Origin: Haliotis cracherodii
Lineage: Eukaryota
Direction: 5' to 3'
Assembly: GCF_022045235.1 (NCBI RefSeq)
Contig: NW_027266341.1
Span: 56,296,001-56,360,000, forward strand
DNA: 64,000 nucleotides
The translations under genes were made by a program, and so were the position numbers. The notes beneath the pieces were generated by a model. It did not search any database, was not told the DNA's origin, and was given only the letters and a program-made list of their open reading frames with translations. This document shows, in pieces, positions 5,698 to 56,267 of the stretch. Position 1 is the stretch's first letter, and each line of letters starts with the position of its first letter.

Positions 5698-6713
5698 CTA
5701 GTTGTAGTAATAGGGAGTGGCTTTGCCAACGAACGACCCAGCAACTCCATGACCAACAAAGGGTCCACCATGTACATAAACACCCTGTCCGGCAACGCCG
5801 TTTCCGACGAAAGGTCCATGTCCAGCAAATCCATTTCCTACAAGACCAGCTACATGTCCGACATTCTTACCGTAGCCGTAGTTGTTGTTGTAGGGGTTGT
5901 AACCGTACCCATGTCCCTGACCAGCAACTACGTGTCCGGCGAAAGGTCCACGTCCAAAAACAACCCCATCATGTCCGTAGACTCCTTGTCCGACGAAAGG
6001 TCCGTGCCCTACAAGACCAGCTCCATGCCCAGCAACTTTCCCAACACCTTTACCATAGTCATAGGTGTTGTAGTTGTTGGGGCTGTAGTCGTAACTGTAA
6101 CCTTTACCAGCAATACCTTTGTTGCCAAAGCCTTTACCGTAGCCATAGTCATTGTAACCGTTGTACGGGTTGTACCCATAGCCTTTACCAGCATCACCGA
6201 AAGATCCGGATCGGATGGGCTTCTGTGCCAGGACAGATGCGACTAGCACGGACAACACAGCGACGACGGCCTGAATATAACAGAACGGTTCTAATGTAGT
6301 TTGAATCAATAAAATAATCTGAAGATAAAGAAAATATTTGTCCAAATCATATTAGATTCAATGTTGGAGAACAAACACTTGCTCTATACGCAAAAATAGT
6401 AAAAAATAAGAAATTGGGATATAATGCATTATGATTATGGTGTGTAAATTTCAAGTTAAGTACAGAACGGCTGAAGTTAATTTCGACTTAACTTTATCTT
6501 GGTGGAAATACCTTTCTCCACAAGACACCCTTGTTATGATTTTTGTGAAAAACAAACATGTTTAAGCTAAAAATAGCACGATGATTTAAGCCACGTGTTT
6601 GTATGAAGCAGGGCTTGGAATGAGCGCTCGATGGCTACCTTTTAAGAATTCCGAGGTAAGGGGATTAACCAAAGCTGACTCTGATCCTAGATTAGAAGTT
6701 AACTTACCTTCAT
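5698..6713 (-). CDS. Secreted Gly/Tyr/His-rich structural protein, gene 1 (type I), 192 aa; exons 6713-6708 (MK) + 6270-5698
   Basis: ATGAAG|GTAAG at 6713-6703 on the minus strand. Acceptor TTATATTCAG ends at 6271; intron 437 nt, phase 0. Spliced N-terminus MKAVVAVLSVLVASVLA-QKP is signal-peptide-like. GYGYNPYN and GHG repeats; ends KATPYYYN; AATAAA at 5632-5627. Confidence 0.9.
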
Positions 6714-6785
6714 GATGAACAGACTTGACTAGACGATAACACCAGTGTTGAGATGACTGATACCACCACTGTGGTGCTGCCTCCA

Positions 6786-6854
6786 TATATACATCCTTAG
6801 CAGGGTCACGTGAAGACTACCCCTGAGTCACACTGCCAAACAAACATCACGTGA
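6786..6854 (-). promoter_or_regulatory. Gene 1 core promoter: TCACGTGA x2 + TATA
   Basis: TCACGTGA at 6806-6813 and 6847-6854; TATATA at 6786-6791; a TGAGTCA at 6824 is present only in this copy. Confidence 0.8.
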
Positions 6855-9724
6855 CCACATCATTTGGCGAATTTGTGTTATGTAACTCAGTTTTAGTGTC
6901 CAGAACATACCGATCGATTAGAATAAATCATGAAGAAATAAAAAATACAATTATATATGATGATACTGTTAATTTATTAATTGTTAAGATTCATTCAATT
7001 TCATAGTTATGTTCTGTAAAAATAAAAATAAAATAACTTGGTTCCAATACTTGTCAACAGAGGGTTGTAGAAAATTATGACTGAGGTAGAGACTTCGGCA
7101 CAAAAAAGCAGAAAGAGGAAACAAAATTTCCACTTCCTATGCATTTCCATAAAAAACTAGTCACATGTACTGTATTAGCGTTTTCGTGTAGCACACTTCG
7201 AATATTTTGTTGTTGCAAAATGACACACTCACATTGAAATTTAAAGAAAACAAAGTCGATTAATGACATATTTTCAAGTGTACAAACTCTATATCAATAG
7301 TATTTGGGACTGCCCTTTCAGACGTTTCCTCATTCATCCTCTATGCGCCATATCACGAAGTAATTGCAACCATCTTGAAACAAATATTGTGAGCCATTCG
7401 TATAATTTTCATCACAATTTGCCTTTATTGCCCAATGGAATGAATCCTTCCACAAGTTACTATCTGGTGCTGACGTTTCATATTTTCTGGTATTTTAGAC
7501 AATTGTCAATGTGAGATGAATGTCACTTTTAGATATTTCCAAAAGATCTTCAATATCATTCTCAGATAATCGAAATAAAGTGTTGATGTGTTTGAAGTAT
7601 ATTTATGCTGAACACTTTGAATGGGGCAGTTGTACTTGTTGTACTGTGTTTTAAATTTAAAGCTGGATAAACCGATTAGTTCTTTGACACTTAAATAACA
7701 TTACACGATTGTATAATTGACGATAATAATAACCATCGTAAGCTATTTAATGGGTATTTGCAGAGATACATGTAGGGGTACTAACTGGTTACTTTTCCCC
7801 ATTTATGTGTCTTTGTGTTATGTCATAGTCATTGGCATTAGCATGGTTGCTCAATTCAGCAATCAATTCTTAACATACATTTGTGAAGATGAAGTTACAA
7901 AACTTATACATTCAAGACAACGTGTATGGGATATTTCATTAATGTAATTAAATTGACCGACCATCCAGGTTGAAACGAGCTGTGAATATGCATACCTTCA
8001 TGCGTATCACGTCTCATTAAAGATTTAAGGCTACGGATATGATCTTGATACCTAGTGCGGTCAGAACAGGGTCGAACGTATTGCCCCGGGCGAGGAATCT
8101 ATCCCACGTCATCACAAGTTTACTCCAAATTGAATACATTTTTATAGAAAACATTGTAGAATATTTTTACCATGACATAATTAGCTTCAATCAAACATTC
8201 CATTCAATATTGAATTATTATTATTATAGTACTTTCTTCAATTATATTTGTTCACTATTTCACGCAAACATATCAATCAATTTGCATGTCAAACTTTTTT
8301 CAGATGCTGAATATGTTATTTAAAGCCATTGTATGAGTACGACTTTATCACTAGGAAACCTGGCACTGGTCAGACAGCTTATAGTCAGTTGGCCAGGGGG
8401 GAAAAAAAGATTTTCGTTCCGACATTTTCCTGTATTCCTTAAACCTTTTCTATTGCATAAAAGGGGGTATCTGTACACAATTTTCATTGGGTAGTAAGCT
8501 TGCAAGTGTGTGCGTGAATTTTCAGGGGGTCAAAATTGCATAAATGAAAGGAAACATGCATAATTTGACAAAATTGGCTGTAACATTTTTATGAAGACAT
8601 TAAACTATCCACATTATGTCTTTGATTAAAGGTAATGTGTTCGGTTGTCTGATTTTGGCAAACATTTTGTTTCATTTAACTGTTATTCTAATTCTCAGTG
8701 GAAACATTGATAAAAATAATGTTTTTTACTTCATTTTCAAATCGAGTGAGTAGGTAAAACACTAATTCCATTGAATTGAGACAATAAAACCACTATAACT
8801 GTGTATTAAAATCTCCCTGACCCATTGTACTATCCTATTCAAAGAACCAAATGCAAACATATTTCATAGGGGCTGATATATTGTATACAATGTTACCCCA
8901 CCCCTCAAAAACCAATTTTAACGAAGATTGCTTATTGAGATATGGTGGTAGATTATGTTGATGCAGTTGATGAGTGGAATAATTGCAACATTGCTTAAAA
9001 ACACCAAAATAGTAAACTCTTAAAGAAAAGTGATGTTTCAAGTTTTTCTGTGAGCATTTATGATGGCCATCTTGAATTTCAAGATGGCCGCCATTTTGAC
9101 CTGTTTTCAAAATCAAGATCTAATATAGTTCTTGACAACATGGTCATGTAATATATCATAAGAAAGCTTTAATTGTCTTTTCAATGATGTACATTATCCC
9201 CAACAATGAAAAAAGGAAATATTTAAAGCTAATTCCTCTAGCGACTTCAAACCATACCCAAATTTAGATTTAAATTTAAATGGACATATTTTCACTCAAA
9301 ATTGTAGGTTTACTGCAACCCCCTGATTGTGGACAAAAAACTACCACTGTAGCTTATTATCACCAGCTGGCATTGGAATTACCTATGTAAAAACAACAAA
9401 TTCATAAATTGTTTTATCTTAATTTGGAAACATTAAAATTAATGTATCATTTTTACATTAATTTTGGATATTGATTAAGTCCAATGGCCAGGACTTCATG
9501 CAAATGACACCATGCTTGCAAGTAACAAGCTACCTGGGTTGCAGAGTCTGTTAGTGCTGTTACATAAAGAAAAGGGGACAAAGTAAAATGCAAGTAATCT
9601 GTATCTTGTCACCTGTAAACTTCTCGAGAAAGACAATGTAGTACACGCAGGAGTTCAAATTAGCCGATCAAACTGAACACTGAAATGTACTAGTTTACCG
9701 TGTGAAAAAGGGAACAGGTTTATT

Positions 9725-9894
9725 NNNNNNNNNNNNNNNNNNNNNNNNNNNNNNNNNNNNNNNNNNNNNNNNNNNNNNNNNNNNNNNNNNNNNNNNNNNN
9801 NNNNNNNNNNNNNNNNNNNNNNNNNNNNNNNNNNNNNNNNNNNNNNNNNNNNNNNNNNNNNNNNNNNNNNNNNNNNNNNNNNNNNNNNNNNNNN
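9725..9894. other. Assembly gap (170 N)
   Basis: Run of N; other gaps at 22531-22690 and 44566-44720. Confidence 0.99.
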
Positions 9895-10161
9895 CAATTG
9901 TCATCTTCATATAGTGTTCTTGACCTTCACACATTAATGATGACAACACTATTGTAACTGTACCCACAAACGAAAGTGAGTTTTAAACACAAGTACTTAT
10001 TTAAACACTTGAAATTACATCACTAATCAAAACATTCACATTGAACAAGTTTGTTCACTGTATTATTTTACTTGGGAAGCTGTAAGACTTTGATGACTGA
10101 TTTAATGACATCACCAATGCTGAGTTACGAAACTGTTGACATATTCTTTTATACGATACGG

Positions 10162-10262
10162 TCACGTGATGCGCGCTTAACGGTAAAACTCTTGGTGTAA
10201 CGATCACGTGACCCTGTTAAGGATGTATATATGGAGGCAACACCATCTTGGTGGCATCAGTC
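10162..10262 (+). promoter_or_regulatory. Gene 2 core promoter: TCACGTGA x2 + TATA + Inr
   Basis: TCACGTGA at 10162 and 10204; TATATA at 10226; TCAGTC at 10257-10262. Confidence 0.82.
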
Positions 10263-10302
10263 ATCTCAACAGTGGTGTATCGTCTAGTCAAGTCTGTTCA
10301 CC

Positions 10303-11473
10303 ATGAAGGTAAGCTACCATTGTACCGATACAGTAATACAAGCATGAAATAGTGTCTCTCAGTTAATTTTGAAGCTTTCTTTAAATGAAATACTTAACTA
10401 AAATTGTATGTCCAAAACATGAGCAACCTGCTTGTAACCAGGTGAAGAAAACTTTATATATTAAGATGCGCCAAAGCACGAGGTTGCACCCATGTGATGC
10501 ACAGTGGTGTGGGTTGATAGGGAACTGACAAGGAATTGAAACGAAAATTTGTACCCAAAATATAATTCATATTTGATGTACCGGGAAACTACATTAATCC
10601 GTACACTTTTCCAGATTAACGAAAGATGGTAACGGATTAACGTCACTTTGTATACATCAAAGGGTCCAACCATTCCATATTCCAATGGATACAGTTAATA
10701 TGACTTTTAACATTTGTATGAAGGTGTTTAAAGTTTAAAGTTCTCAAACTCTAATGTGTTCTTATATTCAGGTCGTCATCGCTGCGTTGTCTGTGCTAGT
10801 TGCCTCTGCCTTGGCCCAAGTGCCTTTAGAAACTGGATCCGTCGGAGTCGGCACTGTCGGTGTTGCTGGTACAGGCTATGGCTACAACCCATACAACAGG
10901 AACCATGGTTACAATGGCTATGGCTACGGTAAAGGCGTTGGCAACGTTGGTGTTGGAAAGGTTTACGGCAACGGCTACACTCCCTACAACTATAACAACT
11001 ATGGCTACGGTAAAGGCGTTGGGAAGGTCGGTGTTGCCGGTCCCTTCGTTGCAGGACATGGATTTGGTCTTGTTGGACATGGACACGGACCTTTCGTTGG
11101 TGAAAACGGCATTGCTGGAAAGGGACATGGCTACGGCTACAACACCTACAACGGAGCTGGGAATGGAGTTGGTCTTGTAGGAAATGGACTCCTTGGACAC
11201 GCCGGACACGGCCTCGCAGAGCCCTTCGCAGTCGGCCACGGTGTTGCTGGAAAGGGACATGGCTACGGCTACAACCCCTACAACAACAACTACGGCTACG
11301 GTAAGAACGTCGGACATGGAGCTGGTCTTGTTGGAAATGGATTTGCTGGACATGGACCTTTCGTCGGACACGGAGTTTCCGGGCACGGTGTTTATGGACA
11401 TGGTGGACCCTTTGTTGGTCATGGAATTGCTGGTTCGTTCGTTGGCAAAGCCACTCCCTATTACTACCACTAG
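10303..11473 (+). CDS. Secreted Gly/Tyr/His-rich structural protein, gene 2 (type II), 235 aa; exons 10303-10308 + 10772-11473
   Basis: ATGAAG|GTAAG; CTAAT branch-like motif at 10751 and acceptor TTCAG at 10771; 463-nt intron. MKVVIAALSVLVASALA-QVPLETG; ends KATPYYYH; AATAAA at 11553. Confidence 0.92.
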
Positions 11474-11644
11474 GGACGTATGCTTGTGATGCCTGATGTA
11501 TGAATGCTTTGGTACTTTATTGATATGTTTTTGTATCCATTTACGAATGGGCAATAAATCTGTTGTTACATGTATGTTGTATTATTCAAGTACTGTGTAT
11601 AGTTTGGTCGTTGTATTACATGTAACGAATATTCTATAGAAATC

Positions 11645-11834
11645 CTCCCCTGGCCACGTTATACAAGGACACTTTCAAGAGGCACTTGTTGTTACCTGTT
11701 ACCCTGATAAAACAAGGACTGGTCGGCTCGGAGTCAGTATAGTATTTCTAAGTGGATAATCATGTTACACTGCGGCATGGTATCTCAGTGAGCCAGCACT
11801 ATAACATCGTCATGGTTCCGGACTAGTACAAGCT

Positions 11835-11875
<41 letters not shown>

Positions 11876-11988
11876 TGACGCACACATACACTGACGCACG
11901 CACGCACGCACGCTCGCGCGCATGCATGCACGTCACTTATTAAGCGCAATAATCTTGAAGCTGACGTTAAACTCCGTCATCTCACCTT
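11645..11988 (+). mobile_element. Degenerate CACCT-tailed SINE just downstream of the poly(A) region of plus-strand genes
   Basis: Matches the body of the 25350 SINE (AAGGACTGGTCGGCTCGGAGTCAGT...GGCATGGTATCTCAGT). Equivalent copies lie at ~22345, 32475, 39260, 47370 and 56430; most contain a (CA)n tract. Confidence 0.7.
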
Positions 11989-13108
11989 ATTTTATACATA
12001 ACAGTAGTTCTACCTTCATACTTTCATATAGTCCATGGCAGGTTTAGCACATTTGTGGCAATGACAAAGCGAGGGACAGGAAGCATATTTTGGGTATCGA
12101 ACGTAGCGTATGATGAGGGATCACAGGTGGCCAAGTCTTCTGAGTTTCGTTTCTTCGGCGTGCTGCATCCTGTGGTCTGGGCCTCAATTACCAGATTCGC
12201 CCTGGTTATGTTTATAGCTTTATCAACACCATATCTGTTTTGGTTGGTTTCAATAAAGTGGTAAACGTCTGAGACCTTCGGCGTCCTTCCACATGAAGCT
12301 GACACCCGTGACGTAAAACAAATACTTTTCAATGTGGTATTAAACTCACTCACTCACTATAACCAGTTAACATTGTTGGTCGTCCGCCGCTTTCATTGCA
12401 TTTCTAAAATACATATTTGTATGTCTTGTGCTTTTAGTAAGATTCACTTAATAACTGTTACATAAAACACCTATCAACAAAGTATGGCGCAATATAGGTT
12501 CAAACATAGGCTTTTTATTTCATTATACTTTAATCACATATAATACAGGTATTGAACGTTTGCAGCATAGCCGTTTCGGAAAGGTATTTCGAGACTTAAA
12601 GAAGCTAAAGCTACTCTTTTGAGTTTTAATTCTCGACCACAGGTCACTATTATGACGACAGTCCGCTCATCGTTACGCAAAAGCGAAAAGCGTCAAATTC
12701 CAACCTCTCTATCGTCCCTTAAACTTGAAATACACCCTCCTTATTCGATCGAGTTTTCTGAACAAAATGTACATCAATCATACATGAAAAAAACACTGCA
12801 TTTTGTAACCAATAAATGTGCGTGTCATTATTTCGAAATATCCTACCGACAATAATTAAGGAAGAAATACTTTCCTATCAATATATGCTATCAATATATG
12901 CAATAATCAGCTGTTTTATTCAAAGGTGCTTATTGTGATTTGAAACCTCTGGTTGACCAGTCAGAATCGAGTATTTTCCAAATTCAAGGAAGAATAATAG
13001 TATCTTTGAATGTGTGTTTCGGGCAATGCGCATGAACGAGTGACCACTGCTTTACAACTAAAAATTTCGTTTGCTTCTCTGACCAGCTTAAACTAATTCT
13101 GTGCTAAA

Positions 13109-13321
13109 TTCTTACTGCTATTGGAAGCACTTCATTAGTTTTTGTCGGTGTTTGCAATTGATTTTTGCATCCATCAACACTTCTTACTGCTATTGAAAGC
13201 ACTTCACTAGTTTTTGTCGGTGTTTGCAATTGCTTTTGCATCCGTCAACAATTCTTACTGCTGTTGCAAGCACTTCACTAGTTTTTGTCGGTGTTTGCAA
13301 TTGTTTTTGCATCCGTCAACA
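13109..13321. repeat. ~71-bp tandem repeat x3
   Basis: TTCTTACTGCT(A/G)TTG.AAGCACTTCA.TAGTTTTTGTCGGTGTTTGCAATTG... occurs three times here; paralogous spacers have one copy. Confidence 0.85.
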
Positions 13322-13698
13322 AATCCAAGCGTGAGCCAATTTCACGTCTGGGTCATGCGATTGAATTTAATTGGCAAATGTTGTTAAACGACGCATTCAA
13401 CACCATTCAAGTAATATCACGGCGGGGACAAGAGGTGGCTTCAGGCATTGTACTCATACAAACAAGTAACTGAAAACATGAGAAATGGTCCATGTTATCA
13501 GGGAGGATGACTCGCAATCAGCCAAACAGGGCATGATCACCCACTCTTTCGACAGTCATTAGATACTGGGGATATTTTCTACTCGAAATAGCCGCAAGGT
13601 CCCGGTTATATGAAACATCGACATATGTGTCTGTCAAACGACAAGCCGACGGAAAACTACGAAAATATTATCTCGACGGTAAACACACAATACATGTA

Positions 13699-13872
13699 CA
13701 GTCAAACACCGTTGTGTCGAACTTTGATGTGTTGAACTTTGGGTTGTCTATAAGAAAAAGCATGATCCCTCCATATTCATTCTTTATTTACCATTTTAGG
13801 TTTTGTCGAACCTCGGACAACTCGGAATATTTACGTAGGTCCCTTCAACTTCGACACAACGCTGTTTGACTG
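13699..13872. mobile_element. MITE (Tc1/mariner-pogo-like), ancestral to the array
   Basis: TIRs CAGTCAAACACCGTTGTGTCGAA / TTCGACACAACGCTGTTTGACTG with TA flanks. Copies at 24381-24539 and 34146-34315; decayed copies at ~41880-41944, ~51525-51668 and ~59942-60110. Confidence 0.8.
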
Positions 13873-14019
13873 TATGTGTGCCCTATATATCCACCTTGCA
13901 AAAGCAATCGTACTTCCACACAGGGTTTTAATTATAAAAGGTAACCTTTTTAGAAGGATGAAGACCACAAACGTCACTTTGTTACTATTTCATCCCTCGG
14001 AGGGAATATATCGTCTCGG

Positions 14020-14331
14020 TGATTTAGCCTCTGTCCGGACAGCGAAATGTCGGTGGCTTGACCCCTTGACTGACTTAACAACGACAGTACTTGTTGTCCT
14101 GCCTGGTGCTCGGCATCTGTCTGAGTGGAGTTGGTGCTCGGCATCTGTCTGAGTGGAGTATCCGTGTTACACTGCACCATGGTATATCAGTGCCCTAAGC
14201 TTTAAAACCGTCAGAAGTCTGCATTAGTACAAGCAGCCACACACGTGCATGCACGTCGCTGTATAAGTAAAATAATCGTGAACATGACGTTAAAATCCCA
14301 TTTCACCTCACCTCACCTCAAACTCACCTCG
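14020..14331 (+). mobile_element. Second degenerate CACCT-tailed SINE per spacer
   Basis: Decayed tRNA-like head, SINE body and (CACCT)n tail. Paralogues at ~24700-25045, 34460-34975, 42090-42350, 51780-52010 and 60270-60575. Confidence 0.65.
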
Positions 14332-15410
14332 GCTCTGCTACGCCTAAAGAACTGCATATGTAGAGATTGTACAACCCTGCACTGATTTGGATTTGAAATT
14401 GAAATCCGCTTGGGTCACTTTGTACATCAACGACTGACAATGAAACTGGAAATCATGAATATCACGATCTTTCATATTCATTGAAAATGCCAAAAATAAT
14501 TTTCGCGGCATTAAAACAAAAGCTTCATTTTTCATGGCAAGAAATATCATTATAAAGCTATAAAGCACCTTTTTTTACACGACACAGTATTAAAAGTATT
14601 AACGAATACATGAAGGTAACAAATCAAAACATGCAATGTGTTTTATTGTTTGATAATATAGGGGATAGCTTTTCCAGATGGAAAGCTCCGAGGAGACCTT
14701 TACAACAAAGCATCAGCAATGTTTGTCTGGTTAAAATATACATACACTGATCAGTTGTTTCCCACTTGAATTACTTTACACGATTGTATAGACGATGGCC
14801 GAAAATATCGTTTTAACAACTATCATATTTAGCATCTATATATCCTGACTATGTGCATATTTCAAAAATAACTTTACTAAAAACTATTTATGAATTTCAT
14901 GTAAGTGGTATTTCCAGAGATGCGTGAAGGGGTACTGGCGGGACATTGTTTCACGGTTTATGTGACTACGTGTTATTTTACATTTGCATACGTACTCAAT
15001 TCAATAATCAATTCTTCAAATCCATTCGGGAGGTTACTCAATTCAATCATTAACTGCTTGCATGTAAATGCAACAAAACTAATGCATTCAACACAACGTT
15101 TATGGGATACTTCATTAAAGTAATTATAGACCATTCAGGTCGAAGCTGAAGCTGTAAATTTGCATACCTTCATGTATACCACATCACATTAAAGATTTAA
15201 GCCTCGACACCGAGGGTAGTCACAATAGCGTCGAACGTATTGCCCCGGGCGAGGAATCTATCCAACGTCATTGAATCCAAATTAAACACATTAAACACTA
15301 ATTGGCCTCCCATTTGTCAGACAGCGTTTAACAACACAAGAAAACAACAACCCTGCATTCAGCCATATTCCAGGTGACAAAATCCAATGATTTACATCAT
15401 GAGCATCGAT

Positions 15411-15455
15411 CTACTACCACTACAATAACAACAACAACAACAACTACTACTACTA

Positions 15456-15500
<45 letters not shown>

Positions 15501-15550
15501 TAAAAGCTACCACTACTACTACTACTATATGTACTGCTGCTACTCCTACT
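15411..15550. repeat. (TAC)n/(AAC)n microsatellite
   Basis: Direct reading; paralogous tracts at ~26490, 36260 and 52990. Confidence 0.9.
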
Positions 15551-16467
15551 ATACCTTTTGCCTCCAGTTGGTATTGAAATCATCCATGTGAAAAAAATCA
15601 ATTAATTGTTTTATTTTCATTTGCAAAAATAAAAACAGAATTTATCAGTTCTAAATTTGAATATGGATTGAGACTGCCGTGGGTCCAATGAACAGGGTGT
15701 CTTGTAGATGACACCACGTTAGCAAGTAGCACTTCGGTTGCAGATCTAGAGTCTATTACAAATTATGCTCCCGTATGCAATTAAGTCAAAACTCAAACAT
15801 AACTCAAATTCAGTTAAAGGGAACAACGTAGTTGATGAAAGAAATGTATGTGCATGTTTCATGGGGATTTTAAACTTCACAGGAAAAGCAATGTCGTACG
15901 CACTGGAGTTCAAATTAGCCGATCAAACTCAACACTGGTTTGTACAAGAATATGTTTATTGGCATGAGTCACCCAATAAGCAAGAAGTTAAAACATATAC
16001 GATATACCGCTGCCAGTGTAGTCGTAATATATGCAAAGACAGATGTTAAGATTACCTTTTAGCAGTTGATAGTCAACGTTGTATGAAAAGGTAAGAACCT
16101 GTATGTCCATTGTATTATCTGCGGTAACTTGTGCCAGAAACCTGTGATCGTGTGTTCGAATTCCTGTTAGACCTGATTATGTTTATTAGAATTGTCAGCA
16201 CCACACCTGTGCTCGAGGCTTTAGCCTCAGAAATAAAAACTTGCATCACTTCGTGTTTTCTTCCCATTTCAAACTGAAACGCCGTCAAATGACTGAAAAA
16301 CTGTTCAAAGCGGTGTTAAACCTACCTCACTCAATGATTCGTAACTTGTAATAAAAATACAACAATATATATGTTTTGAAAACATTATTTGGTAAGATAA
16401 TTTAACGATGCAAAAGGTATATACATCCATTATAAAACACATTCATACATCAGACAAGCATACGTCT

Positions 16468-17414
16468 CTAGTGGTAGTAATAGGGACTGGCTTTGGCGAC
16501 GAACGACCCAGCAACTCCATGACCAACAAAGGGTCTTCCATGTCCATAAACACCGTGTCCGACGAAAGGTCCATGTCCAGCAAATCCATTTCCTACAAGA
16601 CCAGCTCCATGTCCGACGTTCTTCCCGTAGCCGTAGTTGTTGCTGTAGGGGTTGTAACCGTAGCCATGTCCCTGACCGGCAACTACGTGTCCTACGAAAG
16701 GTCTACGTCCAAAAACAACGCCATCATGTCCGTAGACTCCTTGTCCGAGACTAGCTCCATACCCAGCAACTTTCCCAACACCTTTACCATAGCCATAGGT
16801 GTTGTAGTTGTTGGGGCTGTAGTCGTAACCATAACCTTTACCAGCAATACCTTTGTTACCAAAGCCTTTACCGTGGCCATAGTCATTGTAACCATTGTAC
16901 GGGTTGTACCCATAGCCTTTACCAGCATCACCGAAAGATCCGGAACGGATGGGCTTCTGTGCCAGGACAGAGGCGACTAGCACGGACAACACAGCGACGA
17001 CGGCCTGAATATAACAGAACGGTTCTAATGCAGTTTGAATCACAAAAATACATCTGATAATAACGAAAATATTTGTCCAAATCATAATAGATTCCATGTT
17101 GGAGAACAAAAACTTGCTCTATAATAGTAAATATATATTTCTATGAAAAGTAAAACTAAAGTAAGAAGTCGGGATAAATGTATTTTCTGTGATATTTTTG
17201 TTTGTAAATTTCAAGTTAAGACAGAACGGCTGAAGTTAATTTCGATTTAACTTTATCTTGGTGGAAATACCTTCGCACGATGAGTTATAAGCCACGTGTT
17301 TGTATGAAACAGGGCTTGGAATGGGCGCTTGATGGCTACCTTTTAAGAATTCCGAGGTAAGGGGATTAACCAAAACTGACTCTGATCCTAGATTAGAAGT
17401 TATCTTACCTTCAT
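16468..17414 (-). CDS. Secreted Gly/Tyr/His-rich structural protein, gene 3 (type I), 180 aa; exons 17414-17409 + 17004-16468
   Basis: Same two-exon structure; intron 17005-17408 (404 nt); MKAVVAVLSVLVASVLA-QKP; ends KASPYYYH. Confidence 0.9.
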
Positions 17415-17475
17415 GATGAACAGACTTGACAACAGTGTTGAGATGACTGATACCACCACTGTGGTCTTGCCTCCA

Positions 17476-17545
17476 TATATACATCTTCAGCAGGGTCACG
17501 TGAAGACTACCCCCTGAGTTAAACTGCCAAACGAACATCACGTGA
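17476..17545 (-). promoter_or_regulatory. Gene 3 core promoter
   Basis: TCACGTGA at 17496 and 17538; TATATA at 17476-17481. Confidence 0.8.
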
Positions 17546-20399
17546 CCACATCATTTGACGAATTTGTGTTTTATAACTCAGTTTTAGTGTCCACAATATA
17601 TATACTGATCGAGTAGACTTAATCATGAAGATATTACAAATAAAATTATATATAATTTATACTGTTAATTTATTAATTTTCAAGATTCATTCATGTTCAT
17701 AATTATTTATTTTCTGTAAAAATAAAAATATAATAACTTGGTTACAATACTTGTCAACAGAAGGTTTTGGAAAATTATGACTAAGGTAGAGACTTCGGCA
17801 CAAAGAAGCAAGTAGAGGAAAAACAAAGTTTCCGCTTCCTATTCATTTTCATCAAAAATAGTCATATATACTGTATTAACATTTTTGTGTAGCACACATT
17901 GAATATTTTTGTGACACACTCACATTGAAATGTAAAGAAAACAAAGTCGATTAATTACATATTTCTAAGTGTACAAGTTCGAGATCAATAGTATTTGGGA
18001 CTGCCCTTTCACATGCTTCCTCCTTCAGCTTCTTATCACTAAGTAATTGCAACTATCTGGAACAAATATTGTGAGCCATTCGTATAGTTTCCATCACAAT
18101 TTTGCCTTTTCGCCCAATGGAATGAATCTTTTCACAAAATAATATCTGGTGCTGAAGTTTCTGGTATTTTTAGACAATTTTCAATATGAGATCGATGTCA
18201 CTTTCCAAAAGATCTGTCAATATTATTTTTAGATGATTGAGATAAAATATTGATGTGTTTGAAGTATAATTATGCTGAATAACTGTGTGTTGGACAGTTT
18301 CACTTGATGTACTGTGTTTTAAATTTAAAGCTGGATAAAAAAAAAATATGGCTCTCACACGTGGCATTACACGATTGTATAATTGACGAAAATATCCTTA
18401 TAATAACTATCGTAAGCTATTTGATGGATATTTGCAGAGATACATGTAGGGGTACTAACGGGTTACTTTTCCCCATTTATGTGACTTTGTGTTATGTCAT
18501 TGGCATTAGCATGGCTGCTCAATTCAGCAATCAATTCTTTACATCCATTTGTGAAGATGAAGTAACAAAACTAATGCATTCAAGACAACGTGTATGGGCT
18601 ATTTCATTAACGTAATTAAATTGACCATCCGGGTTGAAACGAGCTGTGAATATGCAAAGCTTCATGTATATCACATCTCATTAAGGATTTAAGCCTGCGG
18701 ATATGATCTTGATCCCGAGTGCGGTCAGAACAGCGTCGAATGTATTGCCCCCGGCTAGGAATCTACCCCACGTCATCACAAGTTTACTCCAAATCGAAAA
18801 CATTTTTATAGACAGCATTGTAGAGTTTTTTTACAATGACATAATTAGCTTCAATCAAACATTCCATTCAATATTTAAAAGTACTTTCTTCAATTATATT
18901 CGTTCACTATTTCACGCAGACATATCAATAAATTTGCATGTCAAACTATTTTCAGGTGCTGAATATGTTGCTTAAAACCATTGTATGAGTACGACTTTAT
19001 GACAAGGAAACCTGGCACTGGTCAGACAGCTTATAGTCAGTTGGCCAGGGGAGAAAAAGAAGATTTTCGTTCCCACATTTTCCTGTATGCCTTTCCACTT
19101 TTTCTATTGCATAAAGGAGGTATATTTTCGAAATTTTCATTGGGTAGTAAGCTTGCAAGTGTGTACGTGAATTTTCAGGGGATCAAAATTGCATGAATTG
19201 AAGGAAACATGCATAATTTGACAAAATTGGCTGTAACATTTTTATTAAGTCATTAAACTATCCATATTATGTCTTTGATTAAAGGTAATGTGTTCGGTTA
19301 TCTGAATTTGGCAAACATTTTGTCTCTTTTTACTGTTATTCTAATTCTCAGTGGAAACATTGATAAAAATAATGTTTTTAACTTCATTTTCATATCGTGT
19401 GAGTAGGTAAAACACTATTTCCATTGAACTGAGACAATAAAACCACCATAACTGTGTATTAAAATCTGCCTGACTCATTGTTCTATCCTATACAAAACAC
19501 AAAATGCAAACATATTACATAGGGGCTGAGATATTGTATACAATGTTACCCCACCCCCAAATAAACAATTTTGACGATAATTGCTTATTGAGATATGGTG
19601 GTAGATCATGTTGATGTAGTGGATGAGTGGAATAACTGCAACAATTCATAAAACAACCAAAATAGTAAACTCATAAAGAAAAGTGATGTTTCAAGTTTTT
19701 CTGGGAGTATTTATGGTGGCCATCTTAAATTTTGACTTGTTTTCAAAATCAAGATCTAATATTATATAGTTCTTGACAACGTGTCATGTAATATATCATA
19801 TGAAAGCTTTTTACATTGTCTTTTCAATGATGTACATTATCCCCAACAATGTAAGAAAGGAAATATTGAAAGCTAATTTCTCTCGTGATTTCAAAACATG
19901 CCCAAATTAAGATTTAAATTAAAATGGACACATTTTCACTCAAAATTGTAGATATACTGCAACCCCCTAATTAAGTGCACAAAAAAAACTACCACTATAT
20001 CTTATTATCTCCAGCTGGCATTGGAATTACCTTTGTAGAAACAGCAAATTCATCAATTGTTTTATCTTAATTTGGAAACATAAAAAATAATGTATCATTT
20101 TTACATTAATTTTGGATATGGATTAAGTCCAATAGCAGGGACTTCATGCAAATGACACCATGCTTGCAAGTAACAAGCTACCTGGGTTGCAGAGTCGGTT
20201 AGTGCTGTTACATAAAGAAAGGGGACAAAGTAAAATGAAAGTAATCTGTTTCTTGTTATCTGTAAACTTCTCGACAAAGACAATGTAGTACACGCTGGAG
20301 TTCAAATTAGCCGATCAAACTGAACATTGAAATGTACTGGACTACCGTGGGGGAAAATGGGAACAGGTTTATTGTACATGAATCAAACAATGTATGTAC

Positions 20400-20454
20400 A
20401 TGTATGTATGTGTGTGTGCGTGCGTGCGAGTGAGCGAGCGTGCGTGCGTGCGTG

Positions 20455-20503
<49 letters not shown>

Positions 20504-20582
20504 ATGTGTGTGTGTGTGTGTGTGTGTGTGTGGTTCGTGCGTGTGTGTGTTCTCAGCTTCTGTGGTTCGTGCGTGTGTGTGT
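20400..20582. repeat. (TG)n/(TGCG)n microsatellite
   Basis: Direct reading. Confidence 0.9.
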
Positions 20583-20886
20583 TTTTTTTTAGCTTCTGTG
20601 CATTTTCTTCTCTATCATTTTCAATTGTCATCGCTATAGTGATCTTGACCTTCACACATTAATGATGACAACACTATTGTAACCGTACCCACAAACGTAA
20701 GTGAGTTTTAAACACAAGTACCTATTTAAACACTTGAAATTGGATCACTAATCAAAACATTCACATTGAACAAGTTTGTCCACTGTATTATTTTACTTGA
20801 GAAGCTGTAAGACTTTGATTATTGATTTCATGGCATCCCCAATGCTGTGTTACCGAATTGTTCACATATTATCGTATACGATATGG

Positions 20887-20956
20887 TCACGTGATATGCG
20901 CTTAACGGTAAAACTCTTGATGTAACGATCACGTGACCCTGTTAAGGATGTATATA
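20887..20956 (+). promoter_or_regulatory. Gene 4 core promoter
   Basis: TCACGTGA at 20887 and 20929; TATATA at 20951. Confidence 0.8.
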
Positions 20957-26507: not shown

Positions 26508-26551
<44 letters not shown>

Positions 26552-36299: not shown

Positions 36300-36340
<41 letters not shown>

Positions 36341-44565: not shown

Positions 44566-45673
44566 NNNNNNNNNNNNNNNNNNNNNNNNNNNNNNNNNNN
44601 NNNNNNNNNNNNNNNNNNNNNNNNNNNNNNNNNNNNNNNNNNNNNNNNNNNNNNNNNNNNNNNNNNNNNNNNNNNNNNNNNNNNNNNNNNNNNNNNNNNN
44701 NNNNNNNNNNNNNNNNNNNNCTACCACTACTATAGCACAATACCTCCAGTTGGTATTGGAATCACCCATGTAAAAACAAATCAATAAATTGTCTTATATT
44801 TATTTGCATAAAAACATAAAAACAGAATGAATTATTTTTAAAATTGAATATGGATTATTAAGATTGGACTCTACCGGAGTTGCAGAGCTAGAGTCTATTA
44901 CAAATAATTCATTCATATGCAATTAAGTGAATGTTTAAATATAACTAAAGTTCAGTTAAAGGAAACAAAGTAGTTGAAGTAAGAAATACATGCTCATGTT
45001 TCTTGGGGATTTTAAAAAGAAAATGTAGTATACACATGAGTTCAAACATTTGTGTGGGGAAAAACTGTATAGATTTATTGGTGTCAAGTATGATATTGGT
45101 AGTTACTTTGGTTGGCTGAACCCTATTCCAGCCTCCAGATCTATATGGACCTGGTGTTTGGAGAAAATGAAAAGTTAAAAATGCCAAGTCTATCTCTAAA
45201 TCTCTAAATATTAAAACCATCACAAGTTTTTATGTATCACAACTATTGCCAAGAAAGTCTAAAAAATACATAAATTCCCGGATAGAAGAAAGTATACTCC
45301 CTTGTTTGATGGTGGCTACAATGAAACAGATAAGAAATGGCTATTCATGGGTTCACTCCTGACATCCTTATTGTATTTGATTCTTCATTTTTGATATCAT
45401 TGTTGTTGTTGATGTTTTGTATGGTCGACTACACTTAGGTTATAACAAGGGAGTTATGACAGTAAATATATCGAATGTAATTGAATTATTTTCTTAACAG
45501 ATTTTGAAATAAATTATTAGAATTGAAAAACATAAATGAGGTTTTCAATAGTGTATGACAATCATTTCAGCAGAAAATGAGAGGTCTAGTTCTAGTTTAA
45601 GCTTTAACACTGTCATGATTAAATTCTGCCTAGTGGTACAACGAGTTGCGCAACTGTTCACTTAAACGATGGG

Positions 45674-45743
45674 TCACGTGATACATACGTAGCGGTATAA
45701 CTCTTGGCGTAAAGATCACGTGACCCTGTTAAGGGTATATAAA
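45674..45743 (+). promoter_or_regulatory. Gene 8 core promoter
   Basis: TCACGTGA at 45674 and 45716; TATATAAA at 45736-45743. Confidence 0.8.
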
Positions 45744-45812
45744 TGTGGAGCACCATACTGGTGGTATCAGTCATCTCAACACTGGTGTATCGCCTAGTCA
45801 AGTCTGTTCATC

Positions 45813-47187
45813 ATGAAGGTAAGATACCATTGTACCGATACAGTCATGCAAACATCTAATGTATTCTCTCAGTCAAGTTCGATGCGTTTGAATATACGAC
45901 ACTGTTTGTTCTAATTCATCAATTTCAATTCTTAACTACAATTTCTTGTCTAAAAGATTAGCAACCGCTTGTAACTAAGTTGGGATAACTCAGTATATTA
46001 AGGTAAAGCAAAGCTCGGGGTTACACAGATGTGATGCACAGTGATGTGGGTTGGTTAAGCAAATGACAAGGAAAGGAAAATCTGCAGCAATCAATTGATT
46101 CGTATTTGATGTACAGCGAAATCTCAATAATCTGTACACAGTTTTTTATTAACGAATCAGATTCTGTGTTTTAAAAAAATAAGATCACCAACCTGACGAC
46201 AAGCGGTGATGTGTTTTGTGCAACGAGTATATCATTTCATTGTACATAGTTTATGTTCGTAACGTAATCACACAAATAAACTGCATTGCGAAAGAAAGTG
46301 TACACTCATGTTTTATTCTAGCTACAAATGAAGCAAACAATGAATTGTCATTCGATAGTGATGTATCGAGACGGGTATGATAGTTGCGTTTTGGACTTCA
46401 CTTCTGCAGTGTTTCCGTGAACGTTTGTTAAAAAATTGTCAAATCGAAGATACGAGGTTCACAAAATTTGTGCATTTGCTTTTATATATATATAAAACCG
46501 TGTTTGAATTTTGAACTCTAATGTATTTGTTATATTCAGACCGTCATCGCTGCGTTGTCCCTGTTAGTAGCCTCTGCGTTGGCCCAGGTGCCTTTCGGAA
46601 CTGGATCCTTCGGAGTCGGCACTGTTGGTGTTGCTGGTACAGGCTATGGTTACAACCCATACAACAAGAACTATGGTTACAACGACTATGGCTACGGTAA
46701 AGGCGTTGGGAAAGTCGGTGTTGCCGGTCCCTTCGTTGCTGGACATGGAGTTGGTCTTGTAGGACATGGACACGGACCTTTCGTTGGTCATGCTGGTTCA
46801 TTCGCAGGAAACGGACCCTTTGTTGCTGGAAAGGGACATGGCTATGGCTACAACTCCTATAATGGAGTTGGGAATGGAGTTGGTCTTGTAGGAAATGGAC
46901 TCAATGCACTCGCGGGACACGGCCTCGCAGGACCCCTCGCAGTCGGTGGACACAGTGTTGCTGGTCACGGACATGGCTATGGGTACAAACCCTACAACAG
47001 CAACTACGGCTACGGTAAGAACGTCGGACATGGAGCTGGTCTTGTAGGAAATGGATTTGCTGGACATGGACCTTTAGTCGGACACGGAGTAGCCGGACAC
47101 GGTGTTTATGGATACGGTGGACCTTTCGTTGGTCATGGAGTTGCTGGGTCGTTCGTTGGCAAAGCCACTCCTTACTACTACCACTAG
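45813..47187 (+). CDS. Secreted Gly/Tyr/His-rich structural protein, gene 8 (type III), 217 aa; exons 45813-45818 + 46540-47187
   Basis: ATGAAG|GTAAG; acceptor TTCAG at 46539; 721-nt intron; MKTVIAALSLLVASALA-QVPFG; ends KATPYYYH; AATAAA at 47267. Confidence 0.92.
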
Positions 47188-54732: not shown

Positions 54733-54802
54733 TCACGTGATACATATGTAGCGGTATAACTCTTGGGGTGAAGATCACGTGACCCTGTTAAGGGTATATA
54801 AA
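54733..54802 (+). promoter_or_regulatory. Gene 9 core promoter
   Basis: TCACGTGA at 54733 and 54775; TATATAAA at 54795-54802. Confidence 0.8.
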
Positions 54803-54871
54803 TGTGGAGCACCATAGTGATGGTATCAGTCATCTCAACACTGGTGTATCGTCTAGTCAAGTCTGTTCACC

Positions 54872-56267
54872 ATGAAGGTAAGATACCATTGTACCGATAC
54901 AGTCATGCAAACATCTAATGTGTTTTCTCAGTCAAGTTCGATGCGTTTAAATATCGACACTGTTTGTTCTAATTCAATCAATTTCAATTCTTAACTACAC
55001 TCTCTTGTCTAAAAGTTTAACAACCGCTTGTAACTAAGTTGGGATAACTCAGTATATTAAGGTAAAGCAAAGCACGGGTTACACAGATGTGATGCACAGT
55101 GATGTGGGTTGGTTAAGCAAATGACAAGGAAAGGAACATCTGCAGCAATCAATTGATTCGTATTTGATGTACAGCGAAATCTCAATAATCTGTACACAGT
55201 TTTCCTTGACGAATCAGATTCTGTGTTTACAAAAATAAGATCACTCACCTGACGACAAGCGGTGATGTGTTTTGTGCAAAGAGTATATCATTTCATTGTA
55301 CATAGTTTATGTTCGTAACGTAATCACACCAATAAACTGCATTGCGAAAGAAAGTGTAAACTCATGTTTGATTCTAGCTGCAAATGAAGCAAACAATAAG
55401 TTGTCATTCGATAGTGATGTATCGATACAGGTATGAAAGTTGTGTTTTGGACTTCACGTCTGCAGTGTTTCCGTGACTGTTTGCAGCCTTGTAACGTTTG
55501 GATAACGTTTGTTAAAAAGATTGTCAAATTGAAGATACGAGGTTCACAAAGTTTGTGCATTTGCTTTTATATATATAAAACCGTGTTTGAATTTTGAACT
55601 CTAATGTATTTGTTATATTCAGACCGTCATCGCTGCGTTGTCCCTGCTAGTAGCTTCTGCGTTGGCCCAGGTACCTTTCGGAACTGGATCCTTCGGAGTC
55701 GGCACTGTCGGTGTTGCTGGTACAGGCTATGGTTACAACCCATACAACAAGAACCATGGTTACAACAGCTATGGCTACGGTAAAGGCGTTGGAAAAGTCG
55801 GTGTTGCCGGTCCATTCGTTGCTGGACATGGAGTTGGTCTTGTTGGACATGGACATGGACCTTTCGTTGGTCATGCTGGTTCATTCGCAGGAAACGGACC
55901 CTTTGTTGCTGGAAAGGGACACGGCTACGGCTACAACACCTACAACGGAGTTGGGAATGGAGTTGGCCTTGTAGGAAATGGACTCCTTGGACACACCGGA
56001 AACGGCCTCGCAGGACCCCTCGCAGTCGGACACGGTGTTGCTGGTCAGGGAAGTGGCTATGGTTACAACCCCTACAACAACAACTACGGCTACGGTAAGA
56101 ACGTCGGACATGGAGCTGGTCTTGTAGGAAATGGATTTGCTGGACATGGACCTTTCGTCGGACACGGAGATGCCGGACACGGTGTTTATGGACATGGTGG
56201 ACCCTTTGTTGGTCATGGAGTTGCTAGGTCCTTCGACGGCAAAGCCGCTCCCTATTACTACCAGTAG
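54872..56267 (+). CDS. Secreted Gly/Tyr/His-rich structural protein, gene 9 (type III), 216 aa; exons 54872-54877 + 55623-56267
   Basis: ATGAAG|GTAAG; acceptor TTCAG at 55622; 745-nt intron; ends KAAPYYYQ; AATAAA at 56347. Confidence 0.92.

What the first reader, a model, noticed from the sequence alone, without database searches (positions are those of the whole stretch)
5698..56267. Nine-gene array of secreted Gly/His/Tyr proteins with squid-beak-like GHGVY/GHGPF/GxGFA motifs: candidate coacervation/sclerotization system
Seen: nine intact paralogues with a signal peptide and no Cys or Trp in the mature chain. Tyr/Asn/Lys modules (AGxG(HG)YGYNPYNxNYGYGK) alternate with hydrophobic Gly-His blocks. 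His is enriched toward the C-terminus (e.g. GNGFAGHGPFVGHGVYGHGG), and GHGVY is present in 8 of 9. All end in a PYYY(H/N/Q) tail. Known: Dosidicus gigas beak HBPs use GHGxY and GAGFA repeats to phase-separate and are then His-catechol cross-linked, whereas bivalve shematrins are Gly/Tyr-rich but end in RKKKY-like tails. Inference: a lineage-specific family building a hard, non-mineral or organic-matrix tissue (jaw, radula, operculum or periostracum) by LLPS plus Tyr/DOPA-His cross-linking or Zn/Cu binding. I do not recognise a named family.
Basis: partly seen in the sequence, partly recalled or inferred. Interest (0 to 1): 0.85.

Follow-up and report, generated by a model that had tools for sequence, protein, structure and literature searches.

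The report
Abalone secreted Gly/Tyr/His structural-protein gene array
The window holds nine intact, transcribed copies of an abalone-only gene for a small secreted, floppy, glycine/tyrosine/histidine-rich protein; it most likely hardens into an extracellular material, and its likeness to squid-beak proteins is in composition, not descent.

Summary
Nine intact paralogues lie at the stated places, and the promoter and exon 1 of a tenth lie at 63367-63504. Each gene has two exons: exon 1 supplies only Met-Lys, and exon 2 supplies the rest. The three assembly gaps lie outside all gene models. The mature proteins are 163-218 aa, basic (pI about 9.3) and predicted disordered, with no Cys, Trp or Met. 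GHGVY occurs once in 8 of 9, and all nine end in PYYY(H/N/Q).

Contigs from two public runs cover only the exons, at high depth, and show the predicted splice junctions. The array is part of a cluster of at least 18 genes spanning about 120 kb on one chromosome. That cluster sits among other genes for secreted repetitive Tyr/His/Lys proteins.

Exhaustive profile searches found relatives only in Haliotis (H. rufescens, H. rubra, H. asinina). They found no shematrin, squid beak protein or cuticle protein. The published phase-separation grammar of the squid proteins is not met: these proteins carry one GHGxY and have pI 9.3.

Best reading: precursors of a cross-linked organic material. The closest analogues are the basic Gly/Tyr/Asn proteins of the gastropod mantle belt, proposed there as periostracum substrates. 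The tissue is unresolved and no paper describes the family. First-reader notes of this scan touch the same cluster in the neighbouring window.

The parts
5698..6854 (-). Gene 1: exon 2 5698-6270 (stop included), intron 6271-6707, exon 1 coding 6708-6713, E-boxes 6806-6813 and 6847-6854
   Evidence: Mature chain 175 aa. It has GQGVY in place of GHGVY and ends PYYYN.
10162..11473 (+). Gene 2: E-boxes 10162 and 10204, ATGAAG 10303-10308, intron 10309-10771, exon 2 10772-11473
   Evidence: AATAAA lies about 80 nt after the stop. Mature chain 218 aa.
16468..17545 (-). Gene 3: exon 2 16468-17004, intron 17005-17408, exon 1 coding 17409-17414, E-boxes 17496 and 17538
20887..22183 (+). Gene 4: E-boxes 20887 and 20929, ATGAAG 21028-21033, intron 21034-21496, exon 2 21497-22183
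27220..28341 (-). Gene 5: exon 2 27220-27756, intron 27757-28204, exon 1 coding 28205-28210, E-boxes 28292 and 28334
   Evidence: The intron is confirmed by a contig joint 27755->28204 that skips 448 nt, with ends CT..AC (GT..AG on the minus strand), in run X1.
31038..32308 (+). Gene 6: E-boxes 31038 and 31080, ATGAAG 31179-31184, intron 31185-31621, exon 2 31622-32308
   Evidence: Loose ends at 31616 in runs X1 and X2 carry the last letters of the exon 1 5'UTR, so exon 1 is spliced onto exon 2.
37811..39115 (+). Gene 7: E-boxes 37811 and 37853, ATGAAG 37952-37957, intron 37958-38503, exon 2 38504-39115
   Evidence: It groups with H. rufescens XP_046362886 (P0001).
45674..47187 (+). Gene 8: E-boxes 45674 and 45716, ATGAAG 45813-45818, intron 45819-46539, exon 2 46540-47187
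54733..56267 (+). Gene 9: E-boxes 54733 and 54775, ATGAAG 54872-54877, intron 54878-55622, exon 2 55623-56267
63367..63504 (+). Gene 10, promoter and exon 1 only: one E-box at 63367-63374 (the proximal one is deleted), a TATA box near 63423, ATGAAG 63499-63504. Exon 2 starts about 300 nt beyond the window end.
   Evidence: Exon 2 was read at L008:1363-2160 (266 aa, ends PYYYN).
5383..37000 (.). Three tandem copies of a 10.7-kb unit, each with a head-to-head gene pair (1/2, 3/4, 5/6), 87-95% identical. Genes 7, 8 and 9 follow in 8-9-kb units.
   Evidence: self-BLAST
9725..9894 (.). Assembly gap 1. It is intergenic, between the divergent promoters of genes 1 and 2.
   Evidence: The flanks are colinear with unit 2, where a CA microsatellite lies at 20383-20655.
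22531..22690 (.). Assembly gap 2, lying 348 nt after the stop of gene 4
44566..44720 (.). Assembly gap 3, lying 1093 nt upstream of the ATG of gene 8

Best explanation
The genes encode bulk-secreted precursors of an extracellular, covalently cross-linked organic material (scleroprotein precursors).

Shown here:
- Each gene has a strong, uniform promoter (twin CACGTG boxes, TATA box, initiator), a Met-Lys exon, and one exon for the rest of the protein.
- The product has a cleavable signal peptide (MK, a 13-residue hydrophobic core, then ALA|Q).
- The mature chain is a 17-22 kDa basic, disordered protein.
- The genes are transcribed and spliced, and are abundant in some samples and absent in others.

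Inferred:
- An epithelium releases the chains. The likeliest site is the mantle edge or periostracal belt; the radular sac or jaw epithelium is second.
- His deprotonation on leaving an acidic granule for seawater removes about two thirds of the positive charge. The Gly-His-Phe/Val blocks and the invariant C-terminal block then condense.
- A secreted tyrosinase or peroxidase oxidises the Gly-flanked tyrosines (YGYGK, GYGYNPYN, PYYY tail) to DOPA/quinone or di-tyrosine.
- These cross-link with each other and with His and Lys, giving an insoluble matrix that tryptic shell proteomics does not see.

The many tandem copies would serve output, as in chorion, cuticle and squid beak-protein loci.
For: Gene models and promoter.

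Splicing and exon-only coverage: in two runs from two studies, exon depth is in the thousands against about 13 in the intron.

Protein properties:
- Composition and pI.
- Charge falls from about +19..+22 at pH 5 to +5..+8 at pH 8.1.
- AlphaFold2 mean pLDDT is 36.7, and the signal helix is the only structured element.
- YGYGK occurs 2-3 times per protein, and 12-16 of 18-24 Tyr sit next to Gly.

Selection and conservation:
- Ka/Ks is 0.23-0.44.
- Against H. asinina, the C-terminal 30 aa are 77-87% identical and the rest 50-66%.

Genomic setting:
- The cluster holds at least 18 genes.
- Neighbouring genes encode other secreted repetitive Tyr/His/Lys/Asn proteins, including a YKP-repeat protein and a GGHGLAGQGGFV 12-mer protein.

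Literature:
- Lymnaea Lstag-sfc-6/7/8 are secreted, basic, Gly/Tyr/Asn-rich proteins of mantle belt zone 3. They are proposed as peroxidase substrates, and two of them were missed by shell proteomics (PMC6007483).
- The abalone shell matrix contains tyrosinase-like and peroxidase-like enzymes (PMC6003135).
Against: - The tissue is unknown. The two expressing runs are coded and their library type is only guessed.
- No Gly/Tyr/Val-rich protein appears among the 77 major H. laevigata nacre and prismatic matrix proteins, nor among the 14 H. asinina shell proteins. Either the family is not in the calcified layers or it escapes extraction.
- The Waite DOPA consensus octamer is matched only in its YGYGK core; the best match has 2 mismatches.
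- The proteins stay cationic at seawater pH, so simple self-coacervation near the pI is not expected.
- Aromatic spacing does not differ from shuffled sequences.
- No cross-linking, DOPA or condensation was or could be measured here.
Confidence: 0.5

Rival explanations
1. The proteins would be squid-beak-HBP-like self-coacervating proteins that infiltrate a chitin scaffold in the radula or jaws and are then His-catechol cross-linked or metal-loaded.
For: - The C-terminal block GNGFAGHGPFVGHGVYGHGGPFVGHG contains HBP-type pentads, and it is the best-conserved part of the protein.
- The genes form a tandem cluster, like the 10-gene HBP cluster of Doryteuthis.
- The mature chain is predicted disordered.
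- The family is absent from calcified-shell proteomes.
- An 18th cluster member carries about 30 tandem GGHGLAGQGGFV units.
- His titration removes about 14 charges between pH 5 and pH 8.
Against: - Each protein has only one GHGxY, whereas the published grammar needs at least 4 in tandem, or 2 with at least 3 spacer pentads.
- pI is 9.3, against about 6.0 for HBP-1.
- His is 5-8%.
- There is no sequence homology to any cephalopod protein.
- HBPs are reported only in decapodiforms.
- No buccal expression data are available.
Confidence: 0.2
2. The proteins would be DOPA-type adhesive or cement proteins of the foot or of settling larvae, analogous to mussel foot proteins.
For: - The chains are basic, with Tyr/Gly/Lys/Asn-rich modules and YGYGK motifs.
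- A neighbouring gene carries Tyr-Lys-Pro repeats reminiscent of mussel foot protein 1 (the likeness is from my own knowledge).
- Expression is sample-specific.
Against: - Tyr and Lys contents are well below those of interfacial mussel adhesive proteins (my own knowledge).
- Long hydrophobic Gly-Val-Phe-His blocks dominate the chain.
- There is no evidence on tissue.
Confidence: 0.1
3. The proteins would be secreted Gly/His-rich antimicrobial or antifungal effectors, like the Gly/His-rich peptides of insects or plants, amplified in tandem for immunity.
For: They are cationic, secreted and Gly/His-containing, and they form a tandem array with lineage-specific expansion.
Against: - They are large for such effectors (17-33 kDa) and rich in Tyr, Asn and Val.
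- Ka/Ks of 0.23-0.44 shows no sign of diversifying selection.
- The C-terminal block is conserved across Haliotis.
- The neighbours are repetitive structural-type proteins.
- No processing sites are evident.
Confidence: 0.07

Closest known systems
Lymnaea stagnalis Lstag-sfc-6/-7/-8 (mantle belt zone 3 glycine-rich shell-forming candidates; PMC6007483)
   Same: They are secreted, basic, repetitive low-complexity proteins rich in Gly, Tyr and Asn, with Tyr flanked by Gly. Two of the three were not seen by shell proteomics. They are proposed as substrates for oxidative cross-linking of periostracum.
   Different: - No detectable sequence homology.
- The abalone proteins use Val/Phe/His where the Lymnaea proteins use Leu.
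- The abalone proteins carry a conserved GHG-rich C-terminal block and a PYYY(H/N/Q) tail.
- The Waite consensus is matched only in its YGYGK core.
- The expression zone in abalone is unknown.
Pinctada shematrins (Yano et al. 2006, as cited in PMC2034539)
   Same: Both are families of secreted Gly- and Tyr-rich structural proteins with several paralogues and a Tyr-containing C-terminus. The H. rufescens relative is auto-named 'shematrin-like protein 2'.
   Different: - There is no basic ...KKY tail.
- There is no homology in exhaustive profile searches.
- His blocks and Asn-rich Tyr modules are present here.
- The family was not found in Haliotis prismatic or nacre proteomes.
Squid histidine-rich beak proteins (DgHBP-1/-2; PMC6884462, PMC9068888)
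   Same: Both are disordered Gly/His/aromatic proteins with GHGxY- and GxGFA-type pentads near the C-terminus. Both come from a tandem gene cluster, and both lack Cys.
   Different: - There is one GHGxY here, against 4-7 tandem copies in HBPs.
- pI is 9.3, against about 6.
- His content is about half (my own recollection of HBP composition).
- These proteins have added Tyr/Asn/Lys modules.
- There is no homology.
- HBPs are restricted to decapodiform cephalopods.
Arthropod Gly/Tyr-rich cuticle proteins (nearest ESM Atlas clusters)
   Same: Composition and language-model features are similar, with scores of 0.86. They are sclerotised structural proteins.
   Different: The scores are below the level that indicates kinship. 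There is no Pfam domain and no HMM hit.

Membership tests
Shematrin (Pinctada) | Signal peptide plus a Gly-rich repetitive mature chain | tested here: met
   MK plus a hydrophobic core and ALA|Q; Gly is 28-32%.
Shematrin (Pinctada) | Conserved basic C-terminal motif ending in Tyr (RKKKY-like) | tested here: not met
   All nine end ...GKA(S/T/A)PYYY[HNQ]. Other cluster members end in GHGVY, GGNYY or GHDY.
Shematrin (Pinctada) | Detectable sequence homology | tested here: not met
   Profile searches of 5.8e9 and 1.84e9 proteins returned only Haliotis proteins.
Shematrin (Pinctada) | Mantle-edge expression and presence in the prismatic layer | not testable with these tools
   The runs with transcripts are coded. 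No Gly/Tyr/Val-rich major protein appears in the H. laevigata shell proteome.
Squid histidine-rich beak proteins (HBP) | C-terminal tandem GHGxY repeats (at least 4), or at least 2 separated by at least 3 GAGFA/GHGLH units | tested here: not met
   There is one GHG[VPL]Y in 8 of 9 and none in gene 1, and one GNGFA in each. The grammar is from PMC6884462.
Squid histidine-rich beak proteins (HBP) | Near-neutral pI, so that His deprotonation neutralises the chain at pH 6.5-7.5 | tested here: not met
   pI is 9.3-9.5, and net charge is +5 to +8 at pH 8.1.
Squid histidine-rich beak proteins (HBP) | Sequence homology and taxonomic range (Decapodiformes) | tested here: not met
   There are no cephalopod hits. 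The range is from PMC9068888.
Squid histidine-rich beak proteins (HBP) | Expression in the buccal mass, and phase separation in vitro | not testable with these tools
Gastropod periostracal-type basic Gly/Tyr/Asn RLCD proteins (Lstag-sfc-6/7/8) | Secreted, basic, with high Gly, Tyr and Asn | tested here: met
   the description is in PMC6007483.
Gastropod periostracal-type basic Gly/Tyr/Asn RLCD proteins (Lstag-sfc-6/7/8) | Tyr flanked by Gly | tested here: met
   12-16 of 18-24 Tyr per protein sit next to Gly.
Gastropod periostracal-type basic Gly/Tyr/Asn RLCD proteins (Lstag-sfc-6/7/8) | Match within one mismatch to the DOPA-precursor consensus peptides VGGYGYGK, GGGFGGYGK or GGGYGGYGK | tested here: not met
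   The best match has 2 mismatches (YNGYGYGK). Only the YGYGK core is present, 2-3 times per protein.
Gastropod periostracal-type basic Gly/Tyr/Asn RLCD proteins (Lstag-sfc-6/7/8) | Expression in the mantle belt next to the cross-linking oxidase | not testable with these tools
   The tissue is unknown.

The most novel reading that the evidence does not exclude
Abalone would have evolved, independently of squid, a family of pH-switched Gly-His-aromatic proteins. These would condense as liquid droplets on secretion and then be tanned into a hard, non-mineral material (periostracum, radula or jaw). The invariant C-terminal GHGVYGHGGPFVGHGVAGSFVGKxxPYYYH block would act as the condensation and cross-linking module. 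This would be a second natural origin of the squid-beak processing route, and it would work in a cationic regime.
Probability: 0.2. Interest if true: 0.7.

Novelty: new variant of a known kind. Interest (0 to 1): 0.45.

Why it matters
Molluscs build shells, periostraca, radulae and jaws from fast-evolving, lineage-specific low-complexity proteins, and most of these have never been tied to a material. This family is large (at least 18 genes), intact, under purifying selection, strongly transcribed and confined to abalone. It has a compact, conserved C-terminal module that can be tested as a peptide.

If the family proves to be the tanned matrix of the periostracum or of the feeding apparatus, it would do three things:
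- Supply the missing substrate for the tyrosinase and peroxidase found in abalone shell matrices.
- Explain why such proteins escape tryptic shell proteomics.
- Offer a cationic counterpart to the squid-beak peptides now used as coacervate carriers.

The uniform twin-E-box/TATA promoter is found nowhere else in the genome. That makes it a clean handle on the regulation of a material-secreting cell type.

Tried and rejected
Searches that found nothing:
- Pfam gave no hit for four family members or for the neighbouring genes.
- A search with the C-terminal 60 aa alone, meant to catch transcript fragments with sample labels, found nothing.
- Ten literature searches found no paper on the family. 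The terms included the auto-names 'shematrin-like protein 2' and 'glycine-rich cell wall structural', and the peptide strings GYGYNPYN, SPYYYH, GHGPFVGHG and NNYGYGK.
- Tandem Repeats Finder found no DNA-level repeats in exon 2, so the modules are not recent slippage.

Searches that gave no usable signal:
- ESM Atlas gave only weak compositional neighbours, arthropod cuticle proteins at 0.86 and 0.81.
- A genome-wide search for the twin E-box module, meant to find co-regulated families, found it only at this cluster.
- Aromatic spacing did not differ from shuffled sequences.

Limits on the expression evidence:
- Runs X3 and X4 show no exon coverage. That is not proof of silence.
- Depth in contig-based runs was not used to rank genes.

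Full report
**Observation.** Listing the open reading frames recovered all nine frames at the stated coordinates. Extending each frame upstream showed that it runs into a conserved ...tt(c/a)tat(t/g)cag| acceptor just before the codons for (A/V/T)V(V/I)A(A/V)LS. A conserved exon 1 lies 404-745 nt upstream of every copy. It has about 55 nt of 5'UTR ending ...agtcaagtctgttcatc, then ATGAAG, then gtaag. Each gene is therefore Met-Lys (exon 1), an intron, and the rest (exon 2). This matches the N-termini of the annotated Haliotis relatives, which begin MKAVIAALSV... and MKFVVAVLSV....

**Assembly gaps.** The three N gaps lie outside all nine gene models, so no frame depends on them.
- Gap 1 is 409 nt upstream of the gene 2 ATG, at a place where the paralogous unit has a CA microsatellite.
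- Gap 2 is 348 nt after the gene 4 stop, beyond its poly(A) signal.
- Gap 3 is 1093 nt upstream of the gene 8 ATG.

**The proteins.** After the predicted cleavage (...ASALA|Q), the mature chains have these properties:
- Length 163-218 aa, mass 17-22 kDa, pI 9.3-9.5.
- Gly 28-32%, Tyr 9-14%, Val 9-14%, Asn 7-9%, His 5-8%.
- No Cys, Trp or Met, and almost no acidic residues.
- Tyr/Asn/Lys modules (GYGYNPYN..YGYGK) alternate with Gly-His-Val/Phe blocks.
- GHGVY occurs once in 8 of 9, GNGFA once in each, and every copy ends in PYYY(H/N/Q).

The claimed His gradient is clear in genes 1-6 and mild in genes 7-9. AlphaFold2 run on the family alignment gives mean pLDDT 36.7, and only the signal-peptide helix is predicted as structured. 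Exon 2 contains no DNA-level tandem repeats. Ka/Ks among paralogues is 0.23-0.44, so the genes are under purifying selection.

**Promoter.** All nine genes share one promoter design: GGTCACGTGAT, about 34 nt, TCACGTGACCC, 12-20 nt, a TATATA(T/A) box, about 30 nt, then ATCAGTC. TCACGTGA occurs 19 times in the window against 1.1 expected. Eighteen of these are the promoter pairs. The nineteenth, at 63367, belongs to a tenth gene whose ATGAAG is at 63499-63504 and whose exon 2 starts just past the window end. Genome-wide, the twin-box module occurs only at ten promoters of this cluster. From my own knowledge, CACGTG with these flanks fits USF or MiT/TFE-type bHLH-ZIP factors, and the layout recalls the upstream-element/TATA/initiator design of strong promoters. 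That is inference.

**Transcription.** I ran one search for public runs and laid four runs on 27000-32500.
- In runs X1 and X2, which come from two studies and two organism labels, contigs lie on the exons of genes 5 and 6. Summed word depths there reach hundreds to tens of thousands.
- The intergenic DNA is essentially bare, and the intron has one divergent contig at depth about 13.
- A joint 27755->28204 skips 448 nt with CT..AC ends. That is exactly the predicted intron of gene 5 on the minus strand.
- Loose ends at 31616 in both runs carry the last letters of the exon 1 5'UTR, so exon 1 is joined to exon 2 of a gene-6-type transcript.
- Runs X3 and X4 have nothing on the exons.

The genes are therefore transcribed and spliced as modelled, and expression differs between samples. 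The run labels are coded, so the tissue is unknown.

**Size of the family.** The window is G000:C78:56296001-56360000. A six-frame search of the whole 1.18-Gb genome found the family only on this contig, between 56.271 and 56.386 Mb.
- There are four more copies upstream and four downstream, all with the Met-Lys exon 1.
- An 18th member lies at L049:3416-4768. It has the same signal peptide and Tyr module, followed by about 30 tandem GGHGLAGQGGFV units.
- Some members lack the PYYY tail and end in GHGVY, GGNYY or GHDY.

Inside the window, a 10.7-kb unit carrying a head-to-head gene pair is repeated three times at 87-95% identity. Genes 7-9 follow in 8-9-kb units.

The flanks hold further genes for secreted repetitive proteins, none with a Pfam domain:
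- a Gly/His/Phe protein (L051);
- a Tyr-Lys-Pro/Asn repeat protein (L053);
- two Gln/Ala/Lys/Asn-rich proteins of 800-870 aa with Gly/Ser/Phe tails (L047, L052);
- a protein of NAPHS..NTYQS 12-mers (L050).

**Relatives.** All searches used exon 2 by reference.
- A single-sequence search and a profile search of 5.8 billion proteins returned only Haliotis proteins.
- An exhaustive HMM search of 1.84 billion cluster representatives returned five proteins, all Haliotis.
- The hits come from H. rufescens, H. rubra and H. asinina. Their automatic names are 'shematrin-like protein 2', 'scale keratin-like', 'chorion class A protein L11-like', 'pupal cuticle protein Edg-91-like' and 'glycine-rich cell wall structural protein-like'.
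- The H. asinina accessions are consecutive, so the genes are arrayed there too.

In a tree, the window's genes form three clades: genes 1/3/5, genes 2/4/6, and genes 7-11 together with the H. rufescens protein. None of these clades contains a sampled H. asinina member. Two other clades pair cluster members outside the window with H. asinina proteins at 99% support. The family therefore predates the split from H. asinina, and the window's copies are a later expansion.

Between this genome and H. asinina, the last 30 residues (GHGVYGHGGPFVGHGVAGSFVGKASPYYYH) are 77-87% identical. The rest of the protein is 50-66% identical.

**What it is not.**
- It is not a shematrin. The defining basic ...KKY tail is absent, and there is no detectable homology.
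- It is not a squid beak protein. HBP peptides phase-separate only with at least four tandem GHGLY units, or with two GHGxY units separated by at least three GAGFA/GHGLH units, and near pI 6 (PMC6884462). HBPs are known only from decapodiform cephalopods (PMC9068888). The abalone proteins have one GHGxY, pI 9.3, and still +5 to +8 net charge at pH 8.1, although His titration removes about 14 charges between pH 5 and 8.
- It is not among the 77 major nacre and prismatic matrix proteins of H. laevigata, none of which is Gly/Tyr/Val-rich (PMC6003135).
- It is not among the 14 H. asinina shell proteins (PMC2989941).

**Most likely function.** The closest described analogues are Lymnaea Lstag-sfc-6/-7/-8. 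These are secreted, basic proteins rich in Gly, Tyr, Asn and Leu, expressed only in mantle belt zone 3, next to a peroxidase zone. They are proposed as the oxidase's substrates for periostracum cross-linking, and two of them were invisible to shell proteomics (PMC6007483).

The abalone proteins share the charge, the composition and the Gly-flanked tyrosines. They carry the YGYGK core of the DOPA-precursor consensus 2-3 times each, but they do not match the full octamer within one mismatch. Abalone shell matrices contain tyrosinase-like and peroxidase-like enzymes.

I therefore read the family as precursors of an oxidatively cross-linked organic material. His-controlled condensation on secretion is a plausible but untested step.

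I put the broader structural reading, at whatever site, at about 0.5. By site, mantle edge or periostracum is the likeliest, and the feeding apparatus by an HBP-like route is the main rival at about 0.2. The adhesive reading gets 0.1 and the antimicrobial reading 0.07.

**Literature.** No paper describes the family.

**Earlier notes of this scan.** First-reader notes on the neighbouring upstream window (s1-826459, s1-826460, s1-826583) touch the same cluster. Other notes call the genome black abalone and report separate Gly/His-only and GGLYGGM gene arrays elsewhere in it. I did not test those.

**Verdict.** The array is real, intact and expressed, and it is larger than reported. It belongs to an undescribed abalone-restricted family of the general molluscan kind of secreted Gly/Tyr low-complexity structural proteins, with distinctive His blocks and a conserved aromatic tail. 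The squid-beak analogy is convergence in composition at best. Interest is moderate.

Noticed in passing
window 63367-63504: The promoter and Met-Lys exon of a tenth family gene lie inside the window. Its proximal E-box is deleted. Its exon 2 (266 aa, with an internal duplication of the Tyr module and His block, ending PYYYN) starts about 300 nt past the window end.
   Followed up: yes
L049:3416-4768 (G000:C78 about 56.390 Mb): An 18th cluster member has the family signal peptide and the GYGFNPYGFNNYGYGK module, followed by about 30 tandem GGHGLAGQGGFV/GGHGLAGHGGLV 12-mers (44% Gly). It is far more repeat-like than the window's genes.
   Followed up: partly
L053:3065-4078 (G000:C78 about 56.400 Mb): A secreted 338-aa open frame is built of about 12 repeats of NSYNNYDYKPQGYNNDHKP. 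This is a Tyr-Lys-Pro repeat reminiscent of DOPA-type mussel foot protein 1. There is no Pfam hit.
   Followed up: partly
L047:5425-7827 and L052:6239-8848 (G000:C78 56.236-56.250 Mb): Two paralogous secreted open frames of 801 and 870 aa are rich in Gln, Ala, Lys, Asn and Asp. They have Gly/Ser/Phe-rich C-termini ending in Tyr or Phe. There is no Pfam hit.
   Followed up: partly
L050:2089-4611 and L051:2-352, 3989-4714: Further genes for secreted repetitive proteins flank the cluster. One is an 841-aa frame of NAPHS..NTYQS(I/L) 12-mers. The others are a divergent pair of Gly/His/Phe-rich frames with GGHGFG.AGPFVGG repeats.
   Followed up: no
window 20383-20655 and 43832-44122: A long CA/TG microsatellite lies at the position homologous to assembly gap 1. 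A long ACC/ACA-type triplet repeat gives poly-Thr and poly-Ser open frames. Both are simple repeats, not genes.
   Followed up: no
window 50552-51147: An open frame has a weak match to the zinc-binding region of reverse transcriptases (zf-RVT, E 0.0016, below the Pfam cut-off). It is probably a retrotransposon remnant between genes 8 and 9.
   Followed up: partly
window 27038-27074: A short element followed by CTCA-type simple repeats is covered by many unrelated contigs in all four runs, so it is a dispersed repeat.
   Followed up: no
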